64,000 bases of DNA, from the NCBI RefSeq assembly GCF_021028975.2, contig NC_059438.1, forward strand, positions 24,986,001 to 25,050,000, read 5' to 3'. The stretch comes from Sphaerodactylus townsendi (Eukaryota). Positions within the stretch are counted from its first letter, which is position 1; each line of letters opens with the position of its first letter. The notes beneath the pieces are model-generated. The model was not told the origin of the DNA. It saw nothing but the letters and a program-made list of their open reading frames with translations, and searched no databases. Below are positions 15,911-40,471 of this stretch, piece by piece. The translations under genes were made by a program, and so were the position numbers.

Positions 15911-16887
15911 CCATAAGGGAGCGTTCACTGAAAAGCAGATACCTCAAAACGTGTGGGGACAGGGGGGGTGTCCTGGGCTTTGAGGCGCCTGCTGTGCCCT
16001 CCAAGGGGAGCAACTTTCTCGTCTCTGCTCTTCCACTTCTGAAATCCTTCCTGGTTTGAGGCAGCGCTTGACTTGCCTTTGGCAACAGTCCTGCCTCTGA
16101 TCGCTTGTTCAAAAGGGGCTTTGCAAGGCAGGTGCGCTTAGCTGTTGCACTCAAGCCATTGCTCACTGAGGTGTTGTGGGTTTTCCGACTGTATGGCCGT
16201 GCAGGGGTCTCCCGGAGAGGAGCAGCTGCAGCAGCCGCAGCGAGCCTTCCTCCGGTCCTCCTCCTCCTCCTCCTGTGGAGTGAGCAAAGGGGCGGACAAG
16301 ATCAGCCCCACATGCCTCCCTTTCCCAGGACCAGAACTCCCCCCCTCCGCCTCCCCCACAGCAGCTGCCCCCTCCTCCCGCCCCCCTGCAAGTGACAGAC
16401 CCACCACCCCCCCAAGACCCCCTAGCCGATCGCTCCTCCACTGCCAACCCCTCCCCGCCCATCAGGGCCAGGGAGGGAGGGAGGGCGGCCAGAGTCCCCC
16501 CAGCGACGACGAACCTCCAGCAGCAGCCCCCATCCCCTCGACCGCTGCCACTGAACCCCCCCCCCCGGCCCCGGAGAACAGGGCGGCGGCAGCTGCTGCT
16601 GCTTGGGGGGCTGGACTCTCCCCAAAAACGCCCCCCCCCACCTAGCCTGGCTCCCCCCCTCTCACGTCCTGATCGGCTGCAGCAGCTGAATACAATCTGA
16701 CCCTTAGTTCTAGGGAGAGAGAGCTCTCAGGGAACGTTGTAATGTTCTCAGAGAGAGTAGTAACGCTATGAACGTTATAATGCTCTCGGAGACCGCTGTA
16801 GTGCTCTCAGAAAGTGTGGTAACGCTCTGATAGCGTTACGATGCTGAGAAGTGCCGCGCTGTGGGGGGGGGGGGGGGGGTCGGCGCT

Positions 16888-17996: not shown

Positions 17997-20900
17997 ATGC
18001 CGCGATCGTTCCTGGTCAAGAAGGCGGACGCCGCCCGCACCCGCCGCCGCGCGCCCAACTACGGCCACCTGGACACGCGGCGCCCAGGTCGGCAGCCCCA
18101 CCGGGGGGAGGGCGGGGCGGGGCGGGGCGGGGCGGGGGGCTCCTGGCTCCGCACGTGCCTGGCGGGGCTCTCCGGGCGGGGTCCCCCCTGGGGTGGGTCG
18201 GTCCGGGCGGCTTTGCAGGCGCGTCGGGGCGGGAGGGCGGCTACTGAGTCCGGCCGGGCCAGGTGCTGCCTCCGAGCGGGAGGTCCTTTGGGGCTGCCCG
18301 GGAGGCCGATCACAAGAGGGAAACCGGCAGCGGGGAGCTCTGCGGAGCTCCCTGCCGGGCAGGCTGCCTTGGGCTCGGGGGCAAGCCCTCCTCCGGGCCC
18401 CCGAAAGGCCTTTTCCGACGGCGGGCGGGCGGGCGGGCGGGCGAGCGAGCCAGGAGGACCCCTCTTCCCTGAAAGGAGGCCGGGGCCCCGGGCCCAGCCG
18501 TCTCCAGCGCCCCGCTGCCGGCTTTTGGGGCCGCCGACCCCTCGGGCTGGAACCTCACCCCCCCCCCCCCACCGCCCTTCTCGTCTGGGTTTCCCAGCCT
18601 TTTTTGAGGCGGGGGTGGGGGTCGGGGGACGACCTGGGATTGCCAAATAATAATAGTCAACCACCAGTTAAAGAACTAACAGCTGTGAAATCAACAATAG
18701 TAATATAATAATAATAAACATTACAACTTCCTAGGCCTCTGGGTGAGGCTCGAATTGTAATGAAAGGCCATCAGCCACCTAAAGAACTGGCAGCTGGGAA
18801 ATCATCCGATGATGGTAGTAGTAGTAGTAGTAGTAGGTGCTCTGGGAGGAATACCAAGAAACCTTGAAAAGCATCTGGAAAGCCTGAACTTGGACAGAAC
18901 ATCAGTCCCCATGCTGCAGAAAGCAGCACTTGTAGGAACTGCACACATACTACGCAAATACCTCTAATATCCTAGGTCCTTGGGAAGGAATCGATATTCA
19001 GAGATGAATTCCAGACACTTGTGCTGTGTTATGTGTATTAATAATAATGATAATGATAATGATAATAATAGCTGGGCGCCACCCCAAAAACACTAGGGTA
19101 GCACTTGAAACATCTTCGAATTGACAAAATTAACATCTGTCAAATTCAGAAGGCAGCCCTGCTGGGATCCGCACGAATACTACGCCGATACATTACAACT
19201 TCCTAGGCTTCTGGGTGAGGCTCGAATTGTAATGAAGACCCAACAACCAGCTAAAGATCTGGCAGCTGTGAAATCTACAACAACAATAATAATAGACTCT
19301 CCACAGCTAGACTGATTCCCTTGTATTAAAGTGATGCTCTGGGCCCCCCTCTGTTAGTGCCTTGCCTGGGATGCCTTACAGGGTTGTCGCTTTTCAACAC
19401 TGCAGCAGCTGTGCAGTCTGGAAAGAGATCTGGCCTTGCTTCTCTCCCCCCCCCCCTCCCACCACAGGGCAGTCTCCTGCAGTGGGTGGCTGCCGGGGTT
19501 CACCCCAGGACTGAGCCATCCAGCAGACTAGCCCTGTTGTGTTTGGCGTAAACAGCCCACACGTGCTGCCGGCTGCAGACAGGCCCCGGAGTCTGTGCAG
19601 GCACCTTCCGGATGATTGACGAGGTTTAATGGCTGATGGTGCAAAGATTCCCCAGAGGCAGAAAGTGTGTGAGTTAATCCACCCGACTCCTCCGTGAGGC
19701 TCGACCCTGTTGATAAATGCAAAAGGAAAGCTTCCGAGGGGGTCACTGAGGATAGAGGCAGTCGGGAGGGGCTGCCCGCTGGGAGCCTCTGTTGCAGTGC
19801 AGGCCGGGTGCAGCTGAGAGTGTTGGGGGATCACTGGGAACCAGTGGCTCCCCCTGGGAGCCAGCGTGGCGTAGTGGTTAAGAGCAGGTGTACTCTAATC
19901 TGGAGAACTGGGTTTGATTCCCCACTCTGCCACTTGAGCTGTGGAGAACCAGATTAGCTTGTGCACTCCAACACATGCCAGCTGGGCTACCTTGGGCTAG
20001 TCACAGTTATTTGGAGCTCTCTCAGCCCCAGCCCCCTCACAGGGTGTTTGTTGTGAGGGGGAAGGGCAAGGAGATTGTAAGCCCTTGCAGGAGAGAAAGG
20101 GGCAATATAAATCCAACTCTTCTTCTCTGGGGAAGAGTTCAAGCAGAGGCTGGGCTCCACTCTGAGCGGATGCTTTGGCTTCTTGCACTGAGGGGGTGGT
20201 GAGACTCAGTGGCCCGTTTTGAATCTGGGTCGTCGTGATCCACACAGTTCCCATTAAGATGAATGGGGGGGTTGCAGGGCCCTGGTGTGGTTCTGTGGGG
20301 TGGGGAGAAGTCCAGTTCGGTCATTTGTTCTCCCCCCCCCCCCCGTGACCGTTTCGGGCTTTTGCTGTGACCTCTGCGGCTCCCTCCCATGGACAGAGCT
20401 GGGACGTCACAGGGAAACTCTGCTGAGCTTAGCTGGAAGATTTTGTGCCTCTGGAAGTGACCAGCAATGCGACCTTTTGCTCTCAAAGCTTTTCTTCTGT
20501 TTCTCCCCCAGAATGCAGTGGGCCGTGCCCAGGCTGGCAGGGGCTGGCACTTCCACTCCTCATGCCCGAAGATGCCGCCTGCCTGTCCCCCTGCGAGGCT
20601 GGCTGGCTCTGGGACCGCAGTTCTGGCTTCGCCCACCCATCCTCGCCTCTTCCGCAGAGCAGCCAGGCCAGAGGGGATCCCGCTGGCTCCGGCCGGCAAC
20701 CCACAGCCTCTGGAGACGGTGCCCCAGCCGGAGGCCGACCCTCCAGCTCACCCCTCCGGGATAATCCAAACAACCTCAATCTCCCGTCTGCCTTTGGACT
20801 GCCTCCCAAAAGGACTCTCCATCTGGGAAGCCCTGCAGAGGGCGGAGGGGAGAAAGTGCAGGGGGAGCCAGGCGGGGCTGCTGCCTCCCCCGAAGGATTG

Positions 20901-22230
20901 GTGTGTCCGGACTGTCGCAAGGCCTACCACGGCTTCTCGGGCCCACCCCAGCACAGACAGCTGCATTGCAAGCTGCATTCGGCAGCCAGGAAATGCTTCA
21001 ACTGCAAGTACTGCGAGAAGGAGTACGCCAGCCTGGGGGCCCTCAAGATGCACCTCCGCACCCACACGCTGCCCTGCGTCTGCCGCATCTGCAGCAAGGC
21101 CTTCTCCCGGCCCTGGCTGCTCCAGGGGCACATCCGCACACACACAGGTAGGGGCCAGCCTGGGAGGAGGGGGTGGAGGGCCGCAATAAGGAGGGGGCTT
21201 TCTTCATTTGGACAGGAGTAAGGGAGAGAGAGAAGAAGAGTCTGGATTTATATCCCCCTTTTACAATCTCCTTCCCTCCCCCCCCCCCCCCACAGCAAAC
21301 AACCTGTGAGGTAGGTGGGGCTGAGAGAGTCCTGAGAAAACTGTGTCTAGCAGTGCACAAGCTAATCTAGTTCCCCAGATAAGCCTCCACAGCTCAAGTG
21401 GCAGAACGGGGAATCAAACCTGGTTCTCCAGATTAGAGTGCACCTGCTCTCTAATAAGATGCCAACCACAGATGCAGGTGAAACATCAGGAGAAAATGCT
21501 ACTGGAACACGGCCATACAACCCAGAAAACTCACAACACCCTAACAAGAAAATTGTTTGCAACTGCACCTCCAGACACATTTCTTCTTAGAGAAGATACT
21601 GTATGTATCACAGAAGTGCAGTTTAATATATACCGTGTTTCCCCGAATATAAGACAGTGTCTTATATTAATTTCTGCTCCCAAAGATGCGCTATGTCTTA
21701 TTTTCAGGGGATGTCTTATTTTTCTGTGTTCTGTTCGTTGGGCATGCTTCCAAACAAAAACTTTGCTACGTCTTACTTTTGGGGGATGCCTTATATTTCG
21801 CACTTCAGCAAAACCTCTACTACGTCTTATTTTCCGGGGATGTCTTATATTTGGGGAAACAGGGTAGTAATGTATAGCATGTGCAGTTTATCGACTTGAA
21901 AACTCTGCAGGGCACCCTAAGTCAGCTGTGATTTGAGGGCCCTTCCCACCCCCACAGTTGGGGGGCTGAGATCCCTAGAGTAGCTCCACCGGGGCCTGAC
22001 TCTCTTCTCTTTTGGTTCCCTGCCCAGGCGAGAAGCCCTACTCCTGCTCCCACTGCAGCCGAGCTTTTGCGGACCGCTCCAACCTCCGCGCCCACCTGCA
22101 GACTCATTCGGATGTGAAGAAATACCAGTGTCACGTGTGCTCCAAGACATTTTCCCGCATGTCCCTGCTGATGCGGCATAAGGAGGCGGGGTGCTGCCCT
22201 CCCACCCACCAGGGCTTTGAGCAGGACTAG
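17997..22230 (+). CDS. SNAI3: Snail family transcriptional repressor 3, 309 aa, 3 exons
   Basis: Exons 17997-18087, 20512-21147, 22028-22230 (930 nt). [13 protein letters not shown]; SNAI3-type [12 protein letters not shown]; C2H2 fingers [63 protein letters not shown]. Lies downstream of RNF166 as in human. First downstream AATAAA at 23231. Confidence 0.93.
18657..19294 (+). mobile_element. Cluster of four 3' fragments of R4/Dong-clade non-LTR retrotransposons in SNAI3 intron 1
   Basis: 18833-18967 encodes [15 protein letters not shown]...[17 protein letters not shown]; 19071-19206 encodes ...[20 protein letters not shown]. Fragments are separated by (TAA)n/(TAG)n/(CAA)n tracts. Confidence 0.75.
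19857..20127 (+). mobile_element. Squam3-like SINE
   Basis: Same family consensus. Confidence 0.8.
21230..21452 (-). mobile_element. Squam3-like SINE, partial
   Basis: Same family consensus. Confidence 0.75.
21456..21541 (+). mobile_element. Truncated PLE terminal-repeat fragment
   Basis: AAGATGCCAACCACAGATGCAGGTGAAACATCAGG...CACGGCCATACAACCC; lacks the CTG of the core and abuts a SINE. Confidence 0.7.
21633..21864. mobile_element. Tc1/mariner-superfamily MITE (second copy 39489-39730)
   Basis: TIR CCGTGTTTCCCCGAA.ATAAGAC, TA TSD, internal GTCTTATTTTC repeats. Confidence 0.75.
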
Positions 22231-22433
22231 CCGAAAAACTGGCCGTCCAGGAAACGACGGAGAAGACACGAAGTGCAGAAGCCAGAGGTTCCTTATAACA
22301 TTCAGCCTCTGTCACAAATTGCCTTGAAGAATGGCTGCACTCAGTCGGGTCAAGGCCGGGATGCTCTCGGGTCAAGTGATGGAGGGGTGTCAGCTGCCTC
22401 CTGCAAGGAAGCTGGCTAAGAGACTGGTTTTGG

Positions 22434-22900
22434 GGTGCTGTGTGGTTTCCGGGCTGTGTGGCCGTGTTCTAGCAGCATTCTCTCCTGACGTTTCGCCTGC
22501 ATCTGTGGCTGGCATCTTCAGAGGATCTGATAGCAGGAATGGAAAGCAAGTGGAGTATATATACTGTGAGGTCAAAAGGTAAGGCCCTCTGAATAGAGTA
22601 GCCTGGTATGTGAGTCACAAAGTCTGTAGCCTGGGAGTAACAATGAAGATAGCAAGGTCAATTATTACTCCCAGACTTCTTTGTGACTCACATACCAGGC
22701 TACTCTATTCAGAGGGCCTCACCTTTTGACCTCACAGTATATATACTCCACTTGCTTTCCATTCCTACCATCAGATCCTCTGAAGATGCCAGCCACAGAT
22801 GCAGGCGAAACGTCAGGAGAGAATGCTGCTAGAACACGGCCATACAGCCCGGAAACCACACAGCACCCCAGTGATTCCGGCCGTGAAAGCCTTCGACAAT
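22434..22900 (+). mobile_element. Penelope-like (PLE) terminal-repeat element, fold-back, with hammerhead ribozyme motifs
   Basis: Inverted arms about 22431-22640 and 22665-22870, plus a unique 3' tail 22871-22900. Flanked by direct repeat AGACTGGTTTTGG (22421-22433, 22901-22913). Confidence 0.85.
22776..22818 (+). ncRNA. Minimal type I hammerhead ribozyme motif (antisense copy at 22483-22525)
   Basis: TCCT-CTGAAGA-T-GCC-loop-GGC-GAAA-C-GTC-AGGA: stem I TCCT/AGGA, CUGANGA and GAAA core, GUC cleavage triplet, palindromic ACGT helix III typical of PLE hammerheads. Confidence 0.8.
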
Positions 22901-23629
22901 AGACTGGTTTTGGATTCTTTGCACCAAATTCTGCAGCAGGATCGTCTCTGTTGGGCCTTAGTTGTTCCACCCAGAGAGGGCCGTTGGTGTGCTTTCTGCA
23001 GGCTGGTTCACCCGGGCAACAGAGATCCTGCCCCTTCTTGCCCACATAGCAAGTTCCAGCTGCTCCGTTAGGAGATTTCCACCTCCTGGTATGCAATGAA
23101 ATGTGGTTTCCCTATATTCTTGTGGTTATCTCCCCCTCCACCCTGCCCTACCCACTCACAATTTTTGTGGGTGTGGCTGGAATATGGGATCTTCCTCTTT
23201 CTGGTTTGGTTGTCTTCTTTGATTTTAAGAAATAAAGTAATGCGGCTTAATGTTGACTCCAATCCAATTTCTTTTTTAAAAAAACCATTTAATGGAAGGG
23301 TTTGAAGGCACCTAATTCATTGCATTTTTAAGTTCCTGTTCAGCTTCCTTCATTGCTGGCATTGATCACGAGCTGGCATCAGGCACGCCGCCTCCAAAAT
23401 ATGGCAAGGAGTTCTCCGTGACAATTTGTTGGCTTGCGAGCCACAGCGGAGACGACAAGCTGCTAAGTAGCCTTGTTCCAAGAACACTGGAAAAATCCTG
23501 CTGGTTCAATTCACTACTGGTGTCTTTCACACATTGCGTGGGCTCAGTGGGCCACCAACTTTGGCATCAGGGCCTGTTTGTGACATGTCAATAATTATTT
23601 TTCCTTGCCCCTGCCCTTTGTGTCTGTTG

Positions 23630-24070
23630 GAGAGCCAGCATGGTATAGTAGTGGTTAAGAGCAGGTGCATTCTAATCTGGAGAACTGGGTTTGATTCCCT
23701 GCTCTGCTACTTGAGCTGTGGAGGCTTATCTGGTAAATTAGATTAGCTTGTACACTCCAGCACACGCCAGCTGGGTGACCTTGGGCTAGTCACAGCTCTT
23801 CTGAGCTCAGCCCCACCCACCTCACAGGGTGTTTGTTGTGAGGGGGGAAGGGCAAGGAGATTGTAAGCCCCTTTGAGTCTCCTGCAGGAGAGAAAGGGGG
23901 GATATAAATCCAAACTCTTCTTCTTCTAGTCACAGTTCTTCAGAGCTCTGTCAGCCCCACCTGTCTCACAGGGTGCTTGTGGAGAGGGGGGAAGGAAAGG
24001 GGGTTTGTAAGCCCCTTTGAGTCTCCTACAGGAAAGAAAGGGGGATATAAATCCAAACTCCTCTTCTTCT
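23630..24070 (+). mobile_element. Squam3-like SINE followed by a second 3' half (23927-24070)
   Basis: Full copy then a 5'-truncated copy, each ending ATAAATCCAAACTC(CTT)n. Confidence 0.8.
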
Positions 24071-27039: not shown

Positions 27040-27199
27040 GTGTAACAGTGTAACACACTTTTCTCTGTGATACACCTCTGAAGATGTCAGCCACAGATGC
27101 TGGAGAAACGTTAGGAACAAAATCCACCAGACCACGGCCACACAGCCTGGAAAGCCCACAACAACCAGTTGAGTCTGGCCATGAAAGCCTTTGACAATA
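27040..27199 (+). mobile_element. Diverged PLE terminal repeat with a decayed hammerhead
   Basis: CCTCTGAAGATGTCAGCCACAGATGCTGGAGAAACGTTAGG (27075-27115), then the same tail ending GAAAGCCTTTGACAATA. Confidence 0.7.

Positions 27200-31325: not shown

Positions 31326-40471
<9,146 letters not shown>

What the first reader, a model, noticed from the sequence alone, without database searches (positions are those of the whole stretch)
22421..22913. Fold-back hammerhead element inside the probable SNAI3 3'UTR
Seen: about 200 bp after the SNAI3 stop there is a TSD-flanked (AGACTGGTTTTGG) insertion with roughly 200-bp inverted arms (four transition mismatches over the first 190 bp) and a 24-nt loop. 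An intact sense hammerhead lies at 22776-22818 (predicted cut after C22814) and its antisense copy lies upstream. The first AATAAA after the stop is at 23231, beyond the element. Inference: SNAI3 mRNA would carry a long dsRNA hairpin in which a self-cleaving motif is masked by its own complement. It could be an ADAR/Staufen/Dicer substrate, or a conditional mRNA-cleavage switch on a transcription-factor message.
Basis: partly seen in the sequence, partly recalled or inferred. Interest (0 to 1): 0.8.

Follow-up and report, generated by a model that had tools for sequence, protein, structure and literature searches.

The report
Penelope-type retrotransposon stub in SNAI3 3'UTR
The fold-back with a hammerhead motif is real, but it is an ordinary, young, truncated insertion of a Poseidon/Penelope-like retrotransposon that landed in the 3' untranslated region of a gecko's SNAI3 gene, and its inverted arms, one-sided tail and minimal hammerhead all follow from that element's published insertion mechanism rather than from any SNAI3-specific switch.

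Summary
Observation confirmed. A 467-bp insertion (22434-22900) is flanked by a perfect 13-bp target duplication. It has ~190-bp inverted arms with four transition mismatches, a hammerhead core at 22776-22818, and no poly(A) signal before 23231.

Interpretation mostly not supported. The element is a stub of a Poseidon-clade Penelope-like element (PLE).
- Bases 22786-22900 align without gaps to nt 1-115 of the green-anole Poseidon_Ac consensus (97/115 by hand count).
- The copy ends at ORF +115, and the inverted twin starts about 30 nt further in, leaving a one-sided "tail". Frangieh et al. 2024 and Craig et al. 2021 describe exactly this.
- The hammerhead is the helix-III-less "min-HHR" of PLEs, which is not active as a monomer.

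Four more family copies lie in this window, one of them a second fold-back. An earlier follow-up on another piece of this genome (s1-740868) reached the same verdict.

The host gene is SNAI3 of Sphaerodactylus townsendi. Two other geckos have the empty site and the same conserved poly(A) signal. RNA reads cover both flanks and stop after 23231, so the site does lie in the 3'UTR. A generic dsRNA effect is possible; a ribozyme switch is very unlikely.

The parts
22027..22230 (+). Last coding exon of SNAI3 (zinc fingers 4-5), stop TAG at 22228-22230
   Evidence: Translation. Exon 2 (20511-21146) is 100% identical to NCBI 'SNAI3 isoform X2 [Sphaerodactylus townsendi]'. Acceptor and phase.
22421..22433 (.). 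Left copy of the 13-bp target-site duplication AGACTGGTTTTGG
   Evidence: A single copy is present at the orthologous site in Heteronotia and Eublepharis.
22434..22622 (-). Left arm: inverted, tail-less, 5'-truncated PLE copy. It starts at about ORF +82 to +85 and is antisense to the SNAI3 mRNA.
22483..22525 (-). Hammerhead motif of the inverted copy. In the mRNA it reads as the complement of the motif.
   Evidence: core at 22487-22521, minus strand.
22623..22678 (.). Central junction of the two cDNA-derived arms: imperfect pairing with a 4-nt indel, and a loop of about 16-24 nt. This stretch is also repeated in the genome.
   Evidence: Depth.
22679..22870 (+). Right arm: sense copy of the pseudo-LTR end plus the first ~85 nt of the PLE ORF
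22776..22818 (+). Minimal type-I hammerhead (PLE min-HHR). Helix I is 22776-79 with 22815-18. Core residues: C3-A9 at 22780-86, bulged U at 22787, G10.1 at 22788, C11.1 at 22806, GAAA at 22807-10, C15.2/G16.2 at 22811-12, U16.1 at 22813, C17 at 22814.
   Evidence: Features as listed in PMC4209133 and PMC11167929.
22786..22900 (+). First 115 nt (38 codons, [13 protein letters not shown]...) of the PLE ORF. They align without gaps to Poseidon_Ac nt 1-115.
   Evidence: hand count 97/115 identical.
22871..22900 (+). One-sided 30-nt 'tail', present only at the 3' end. It is the stretch between the two internal reverse-transcription start sites.
   Evidence: Family copies end at 22868/22870 or at 22901 with diverse AT-rich flanks (table 7). 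PMC11167929 and PMC8557442.
22901..22913 (.). Right copy of the target-site duplication
23231..23236 (+). Conserved SNAI3 poly(A) signal AATAAA. RNA depth falls to zero after about 23262.
36549..36766 (-). Second fold-back copy of the same family. It has the 12-bp duplication ACTTAGCCCTCT (36767-78 and 36537-48), 95-nt arms, and the same outer ends and tail.
27075..27198 (+). Older copy of a sister subfamily, with tail and a degenerate helix II
21456..21541 (+). Tail-less copy, 5'-truncated inside the hammerhead core

Best explanation
The feature is a young, dead, 5'-truncated insertion of a Poseidon-clade Penelope-like retroelement (PLE) in the 3'UTR of SNAI3 of the gecko Sphaerodactylus townsendi.

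Inferred mechanism, following published work on the anole element:
1. The element's RT/GIY-YIG protein nicked both DNA strands 13 bp apart.
2. Each nick primed reverse transcription of element RNA from an internal start. One started at about ORF +115 and gave the right arm plus tail. The other started at about ORF +83 and gave the inverted, tail-less left arm.
3. Both cDNAs stopped about 135 nt upstream of the ORF start and were joined head to head.

The hammerhead is the element's own minimal ribozyme at the pseudo-LTR/ORF junction. It lacks helix III, needs a partner copy or the element's protein, and here is locked in a ~200-bp duplex.

For SNAI3 the insertion is most likely neutral or mildly harmful baggage. 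The only plausible effects are the generic ones of a long dsRNA in a 3'UTR.

Shown: the anatomy, homology to the anole element, family membership, the empty orthologous sites, and that the site lies within the UTR. Inferred: the two-strand priming, and any effect on the mRNA.
For: - Homology: the Poseidon_Ac consensus matches 22786-22900 without gaps (97/115 by hand), and its pseudo-LTR end resembles the sequence upstream.
- Published geometry: ORF starts at stem II, the hammerhead cut is 26 nt after the start codon, RT starts lie 111-118 nt into the ORF, and the tail is the stretch between two start sites. Here the ATG is at 22786-88, the cut is after 22814, the element ends at +115, and the tail is 30 nt.
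- Published biochemistry: the protein cleaves and extends both strands.
- Known PLE signature: an inverted 5'-truncated twin plus a 30-40-bp one-sided tail.
- min-HHR features all present: a base between positions 9 and 10.1, a G10.1-C11.1 pair, and palindromic 15.2/16.2.
- Second fold-back: it has the same outer ends, a different fold-back point and a 12-bp duplication. There are also tail-less and tailed single copies.
- Family behaviour in reads: they end at 22868/70 or 22901 next to varied AT-rich flanks, and depth over the element is enormously higher than over the flanks.
- Empty site in two other geckos.
- Site lies in the UTR.
Against: - No full-length RT/GIY-YIG copy of this gecko family could be fetched, so clade assignment rests on 115 nt plus architecture.
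- Identity to Poseidon_Ac is a hand count, not a computed alignment.
- The two arms differ at a site that is polymorphic in the family (22769). The simple picture of one RNA copied twice and then mutated is therefore not proven.
- No RNA read was shown to bridge a flank-element junction. The RNA runs differ from the window by 2-3% in the flanks, so their source may or may not carry the insertion.
Confidence: 0.9

Rival explanations
1. Exapted dsRNA element. The insertion is PLE-derived, but its long hairpin now matters for SNAI3. It would be edited by ADAR, bound by Staufen-type proteins or diced, and this would measurably change mRNA level, localisation or translation in this lineage.
For: - The site is inside a conserved 3'UTR, upstream of the conserved poly(A) signal.
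- The hairpin is extremely stable.
- Locus-specific C22534 is enriched in the one RNA run that covers the SNAI3 flanks: 19/38 against 5/44 and 2/28.
- RNA runs list more A>G and T>C places than the DNA run.
- Long inverted repeats in 3'UTRs are known ADAR substrates (established knowledge, inverted Alu pairs).
Against: - The element is not conserved: the site is empty in two other geckos.
- The arms differ by only about 2%, so the insertion is young.
- Thousands of similar fold-backs exist, so nothing singles this one out.
- Two other locus-specific marks have no RNA support: A22581 in 0/10 reads and the absence of AAG after 22619 in 0/11 reads in X21.
- There is no matched DNA, so no editing call can be made.
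Confidence: 0.06
2. The masked hammerhead is a conditional self-cleaving device that cuts SNAI3 mRNA at 22814/22815 when the hairpin is opened.
For: The core nucleotides are intact in the sense arm. Hammerheads in 3'UTRs can regulate genes, as in the rodent Clec2 genes (established knowledge).
Against: - The motif has no helix III, gives no Rfam hit and has no stable fold of its own.
- The anole counterpart does not cleave without the element's protein, and no RNA ends at its cut site were found in vivo.
- PLE min-HHRs cleave poorly even as dimers.
- It sits in a -422 kcal/mol duplex.
- It is absent from orthologous UTRs.
- The same motif occurs in every copy of the repeat.
Confidence: 0.02
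3. Fold-back DNA transposon (MITE) or an assembly artefact of a palindrome, rather than a retro-insertion.
For: It has long terminal inverted repeats and a target duplication. PLE inverted structures are known to trouble assemblies. The short-read contigs of X15 break inside the element (table 8).
Against: - The termini are asymmetric: the tail is on one side only.
- Duplication length varies (13 and 12 bp) and arm length varies (about 190 and 95 nt) while the outer ends stay fixed.
- The arms are homologous to a retroelement ORF start.
- Contigs of an independent DNA run match both flank-element junctions without any difference.
- Orthologous empty sites match the duplication exactly.
Confidence: 0.02

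Closest known systems
Poseidon_Ac / PAc, the Poseidon-clade Penelope-like element of Anolis carolinensis (Arkhipova 2006; Frangieh et al. 2024, PMC11167929)
   Same: - Hammerhead at the pseudo-LTR/ORF junction, with the ATG at stem II and the cut 26 nt after the start codon.
- The copy ends at ORF +111 to +118.
- A tail of about 30 nt lies between two RT start sites.
- Ungapped match to ORF nt 1-115, including exact shared runs through GGCGAAACGTCAGGAGAGAATGCT and GAAAGCCTTCGACAA.
   Different: - The host is a gecko, not an anole.
- It differs by about 16% over the 115 nt (CUGAAGA here, CUGAGGA in PAc), and the pseudo-LTR is more divergent.
- This copy is a stub of about 220 nt plus an inverted twin, with no RT/EN coding capacity.
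General PLE insertion architecture: pseudo-LTR, upstream inverted 5'-truncated copy, 30-40-bp one-sided tail (Craig et al. 2021, PMC8557442)
   Same: An inverted truncated twin lies directly adjacent, the tail is at one end only, 5' truncation is variable, and the duplication has variable length.
   Different: No ORF body and no tandem pseudo-LTR. Only the terminal module is present on both arms.
PLE minimal hammerheads (min-HHR; Cervera & De la Pena 2014, PMC4209133)
   Same: Type-I layout, no helix III, an extra base between positions 9 and 10.1, a G10.1-C11.1 pair, palindromic 15.2/16.2, and a short helix I.
   Different: Helix II carries an internal A.A mismatch. Here the motif is paired to its full complement in cis, not arranged in tandem with a second copy.
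L1 twin priming (Ostertag & Kazazian 2001; from my own knowledge)
   Same: A second priming event on the opposite strand produces an inverted, truncated segment within one insertion flanked by a single target duplication.
   Different: In L1 the second primer anneals internally by chance homology. Here both primings use defined internal RNA start sites, and the enzyme is a PLE RT/GIY-YIG protein.
Inverted-repeat Alu pairs in human 3'UTRs, and the discontinuous hammerheads in rodent Clec2 3'UTRs (from my own knowledge)
   Different: No evidence here of editing, retention or cleavage. The hammerhead is a minimal, partner-dependent type, and the element is not conserved at the locus.

Membership tests
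Penelope-like element, Poseidon clade (truncated copy) | Sequence homology to a curated PLE consensus | tested here: met
   22786-22900 against Poseidon_Ac nt 1-115: ungapped, 97/115 by hand count. The peptide [13 protein letters not shown]... compares with MPAIDVGETSGEN....
Penelope-like element, Poseidon clade (truncated copy) | 3' end at the internal RT start (ORF +111 to +118) and a one-sided 30-40-bp tail | tested here: met
   The element ends at +115. The inverted twin starts at +82 to +85, giving a 30-nt tail. Family read ends lie at 22868/70 and 22901. Criteria.
Penelope-like element, Poseidon clade (truncated copy) | Adjacent inverted 5'-truncated copy, with variable truncation among copies | tested here: met
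   Arms of about 190 nt here and 95 nt in the copy at 36549-36766, with the same outer ends.
Penelope-like element, Poseidon clade (truncated copy) | Master copies encode an RT plus a GIY-YIG endonuclease in one ORF | not testable with these tools
   No vertebrate genome collection was searchable for full-length gecko copies. This copy holds only the first 38 codons, as expected from the insertion mechanism.
PLE minimal hammerhead (min-HHR) | Conserved cores CUGANGA and GAAA with a UH cleavage site | tested here: met
   CUGAAGA at 22780-86, GAAA at 22807-10, GUC at 22812-14.
PLE minimal hammerhead (min-HHR) | [quoted passage not shown] | tested here: met
   U22787; G22788-C22806; C22811/G22812; A15.1 to U16.1 is ACGU with no loop (criteria).
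PLE minimal hammerhead (min-HHR) | Self-cleavage (as a dimer or with the element's protein) | not testable with these tools
   Needs a bench assay. The anole homologue cleaves only with protein.
Canonical hammerhead ribozyme (Rfam Hammerhead_1/_3/_II/HH9/HH10) | Match to an Rfam covariance model, including helix III | tested here: not met
   No hit at gathering score in the window and none at E<=10 in 22300-23000. The isolated fold has z = -0.18.
Conserved regulatory element of the SNAI3 3'UTR | Presence at the orthologous position in related species | tested here: not met
   Heteronotia binoei and Eublepharis macularius have one uninterrupted target copy and no element, while the surrounding UTR and the poly(A) signal are conserved.
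Fold-back DNA transposon / MITE | Symmetrical terminal inverted repeats and a duplication of fixed length | tested here: not met
   One-sided 30-nt tail; duplications of 13 and 12 bp.

The most novel reading that the evidence does not exclude
In Sphaerodactylus the PLE twin insertion has put a ~200-bp near-perfect dsRNA into the conserved 3'UTR of the transcription factor SNAI3. This hairpin would be hyper-edited or processed, so the filled allele would give measurably different SNAI3 output from the empty one. That would be a lineage-specific regulatory change made in a single step by a Penelope-type insertion.
Probability: 0.08. Interest if true: 0.4.

Novelty: new member of a known kind. 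Interest (0 to 1): 0.15.

Why it matters
It matters mainly as a clean-up. Fold-backs carrying hammerhead motifs will turn up again and again in this genome, and they should be read as Poseidon/Penelope-like insertion scars, not as ribozyme switches.

Two smaller points are useful.
- Natural gecko insertions reproduce, base for base, the two internal reverse-transcription start sites and the two-strand priming that were proposed from in-vitro work on the anole element.
- The ~115-nt hammerhead plus RT-start module is strikingly conserved (about 84%) between a gecko family and an anole family.

For SNAI3 itself the insertion is a natural experiment: a long dsRNA inside a conserved 3'UTR. Nothing so far says it has an effect.

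Tried and rejected
- Rfam, over the whole window at gathering score and over 22300-23000 at E<=10. It gave no hammerhead, only generic miRNA-hairpin look-alikes far below threshold. These reflect the long hairpin and nothing more.
- Folding the isolated motif 22770-22826. It is no better than shuffles and the minimum-energy fold is not the hammerhead.
- Laying RNA reads to prove that the element is in the mRNA.
  - The element is so abundant that reads from other copies swamp it, and junction-bridging reads could not be singled out.
  - The RNA source differs 2-3% from the window in the flanks.
  - Locus-specific letters gave mixed signals: C22534 is enriched in X21, but A22581 and the 22619 indel state have no support.
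  - No editing call is possible because no DNA of the same animals was available.
- MITE or fold-back DNA transposon: rejected on the asymmetric tail and the variable duplication length.
- Non-LTR retrozyme or circular RNA: rejected because there are no tandem direct repeats.
- Computed alignment to Poseidon_Ac: not run, because it would have meant typing the published consensus into a tool. The 97/115 figure is a hand count.
- Joined SNAI3 coding model: left out. Only exon 2 was searched, by reference.

Full report
**1. What is there**

- The last SNAI3 exon ends with TAG at 22228-22230.
- A 467-bp block (22434-22900) starts 203 bp later. It is flanked by a perfect 13-bp direct repeat, AGACTGGTTTTGG, at 22421-33 and 22901-13.
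- The block is a fold-back with arms at 22431-22622 and 22679-22870, 98% complementary.
- The arms have exactly four mismatches, all transition-type, at 22458/22843, 22532/22769, 22534/22767 and 22581/22720.
- The centre pairs more loosely, with a 4-nt indel, around a loop of about 16-24 nt.
- As RNA it folds into one hairpin of -422 kcal/mol, z = -42.5.
- The right arm is followed by 30 nt (22871-22900) that have no partner on the left.
- A hammerhead core lies in the right arm, and its complement lies in the left arm.
- There is no + strand AATAAA or ATTAAA between the stop and 23231.

**2. It is a repeat family, not a one-off**

BLAST of the element against the window finds four more copies.
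- 36549-36766 (minus strand) is a second fold-back. It has a 12-bp duplication (ACTTAGCCCTCT), arms of only 95 nt, the same outer ends and the same one-sided tail.
- 27075-27198 is an older single copy with tail, from a sister subfamily.
- 21456-21541 is a tail-less single copy.
- 16163-16201 is a fragment.

The pattern CTGANGA-N12-26-GAAACGTH occurs five times in the window against zero expected, and every hit lies inside these copies.

The laid reads agree.
- Depth over the element is orders of magnitude above the flanks.
- Reads of other copies leave the element at 22868/22870 or at 22901 and run into varied AT-rich sequence.
- So the family has two alternative 3' ends about 30 nt apart.

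**3. What the family is**

The architecture is the published signature of Penelope-like elements: heavy 5' truncation, an adjacent inverted 5'-truncated copy, and a 30-40-bp tail at one end only (Craig et al. 2021, PMC8557442).

The match to the green-anole Poseidon element (PAc; Frangieh et al. 2024, PMC11167929) is base-exact in its geometry.

| Feature | Published for PAc | Here |
|---|---|---|
| ORF start | at the start of hammerhead stem II | ATG at 22786-88 |
| Hammerhead cut | 26 nt after the start codon | after C22814 |
| RT start | 111-118 nt into the ORF | element ends at +115 |
| Tail | stretch between two adjacent RT start sites | 30 nt; the inverted arm begins at +82 to +85 |

The Poseidon_Ac consensus given in that paper's supplement lines up with 22786-22900 without a gap. 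By my hand count 97 of 115 bases agree. The encoded peptides are [13 protein letters not shown]... here and MPAIDVGETSGEN... in Poseidon_Ac. I did not type the consensus into an aligner, so this figure is manual.

**4. The hammerhead**

It has every feature that Cervera and De la Pena (2014, PMC4209133) list for PLE minimal hammerheads.
- The cores are CUGAAGA (22780-86) and GAAA (22807-10).
- There is an extra base between positions 9 and 10.1 (U22787).
- G10.1-C11.1 is formed by 22788 and 22806.
- Positions 15.2/16.2 are palindromic (C22811, G22812).
- There is no helix III.
- Helix I is a short 4 bp.

This explains why Rfam finds nothing and why the isolated motif folds no better than shuffled sequence. 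Such motifs cleave weakly and only as dimers. The anole one cleaves only when the element's protein is added, and no RNA ends at its cut site were seen in vivo. So "intact" is true of the core letters, not of a self-sufficient ribozyme.

**5. How the fold-back arose (inference)**

The PAc protein nicks and extends both DNA strands and starts reverse transcription at two internal RNA sites. A 13-bp staggered double nick would produce two cDNAs. One, primed from +115, gives the right arm plus tail. The other, primed from about +83 on the opposite strand, gives the left arm. The two cDNAs are then joined head to head.

This gives exactly the observed structure and explains three things:
- the outer ends are constant;
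- the fold-back point varies between copies;
- the duplication length varies (13 and 12 bp).

It is the PLE counterpart of L1 twin priming.

One open detail: the arms differ at 22769, a site that is C/T polymorphic in the family. Either two template RNAs were used or the arms mutated later.

**6. Host gene and UTR**

Exon 2, searched by reference as 20511-21146, is 100% identical to NCBI's SNAI3 isoform X2 of Sphaerodactylus townsendi. All next-best hits are gecko and other reptile SNAI3. The joined coding model was not built.

The orthologous 3'UTRs of Heteronotia binoei (L001) and Eublepharis macularius (L002) align on both sides of the insertion. Each carries one uninterrupted copy of the target...AGAGCCTGGCTTTGGATTCTTTGCACC... 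in Heteronotia. The insertion is therefore lineage-specific and the duplication is genuine.

The signal AGAAATAAA at 23231 and the following CTCCAAxCCAA are invariant in all three geckos, and conservation stops just after them.

The RNA reads of runs X21 and X20 point the same way.
- They cover the unique flanks on both sides. In X21 the depth is about 4-8 upstream and 10-19 downstream.
- Depth vanishes after about 23262.

So the insertion site is inside the real SNAI3 3'UTR.

**7. What the RNA data do not show (all)**

- The RNA source differs from the window at 2-3% of flank positions, all as fixed differences.
- No DNA of those animals was available.
- Reads from other copies swamp the element.

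Signals from locus-specific letters are mixed.
- C22534 makes up about 6% of family DNA depth. It is seen in 19/38 reads in X21, the run that covers the SNAI3 flanks, against 5/44 and 2/28 in the other two runs.
- A22581 is seen in 0/10 reads in X21.
- The lack of AAG after 22619 is seen in 0/11 reads in X21.

I therefore cannot say that the sequenced mRNAs carried the element. I also cannot call editing, although A>G at 22471, 22474 and 22477 is 10-30% in RNA against under 0.5% of DNA depth.

**8. Verdict**

The element is an ordinary Poseidon-type PLE stub. The claim that SNAI3 mRNA from this allele contains a long hairpin is well founded.

The claim that this is a conditional cleavage switch is not supported. 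The ribozyme is partner-dependent and buried, it is shared by every copy of the repeat, and it is absent from orthologous UTRs. A generic dsRNA effect on the message remains possible but untested.

An earlier follow-up on another piece of the same genome (s1-740868) reached the same classification. I saw it only after reaching mine. Two first-reader notes on this window (s1-746426, s1-746387) describe the family and the second fold-back, both of which I checked here.

Noticed in passing
window 22471, 22474, 22477 (left arm): A>G in 10-30% of RNA reads in all three RNA runs, but under 0.5% of DNA depth in run X15. RNA runs also list more A>G and T>C places overall (11-23) than the DNA run (3). 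This could be ADAR editing of family hairpin transcripts, or copy variants of a different animal. No matched DNA was available.
   Followed up: partly
window 22786-22900 against Poseidon_Ac nt 1-115: A gecko and an anole PLE family share about 84% identity, without gaps, over the hammerhead plus RT-start module, while their pseudo-LTRs are far more diverged. This suggests strong constraint on the RNA module across Gekkota and Iguania, or horizontal transfer.
   Followed up: no
window 22767/22769 against 22534/22532: The two arms differ at two sites two bases apart (22767 and 22769). One of them, 22769, is C/T polymorphic across the family (23-41% T in reads). The two arms may have been copied from two different template RNAs.
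   Followed up: no
window 36537-36778: A second fold-back of the same family, with 95-nt arms joined without a loop and a 12-bp duplication. According to a first-reader note it lies close to a CHMP1A exon. I did not check the exon.
   Followed up: partly
window about 23806-23930; L001 2343-4686 and 12379-12719: A unit of about 105 nt downstream of SNAI3 matches a long tandem array in the Heteronotia SNAI3 locus at 78-84%. It is a satellite or SINE-like repeat shared among geckos.
   Followed up: no
window 22901 (table 7, run X20): About 2,500 reads in X20 leave the element's tailed end into a single flank (consensus agreement 0.79). One particular family copy is highly transcribed in that sample.
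   Followed up: no
window 21360-21455: The sequence just upstream of the tail-less copy at 21456 looks like a tRNA-derived SINE body (…GGGAATCAAACCTGG…). Repeats are nested in the last SNAI3 intron.
   Followed up: no
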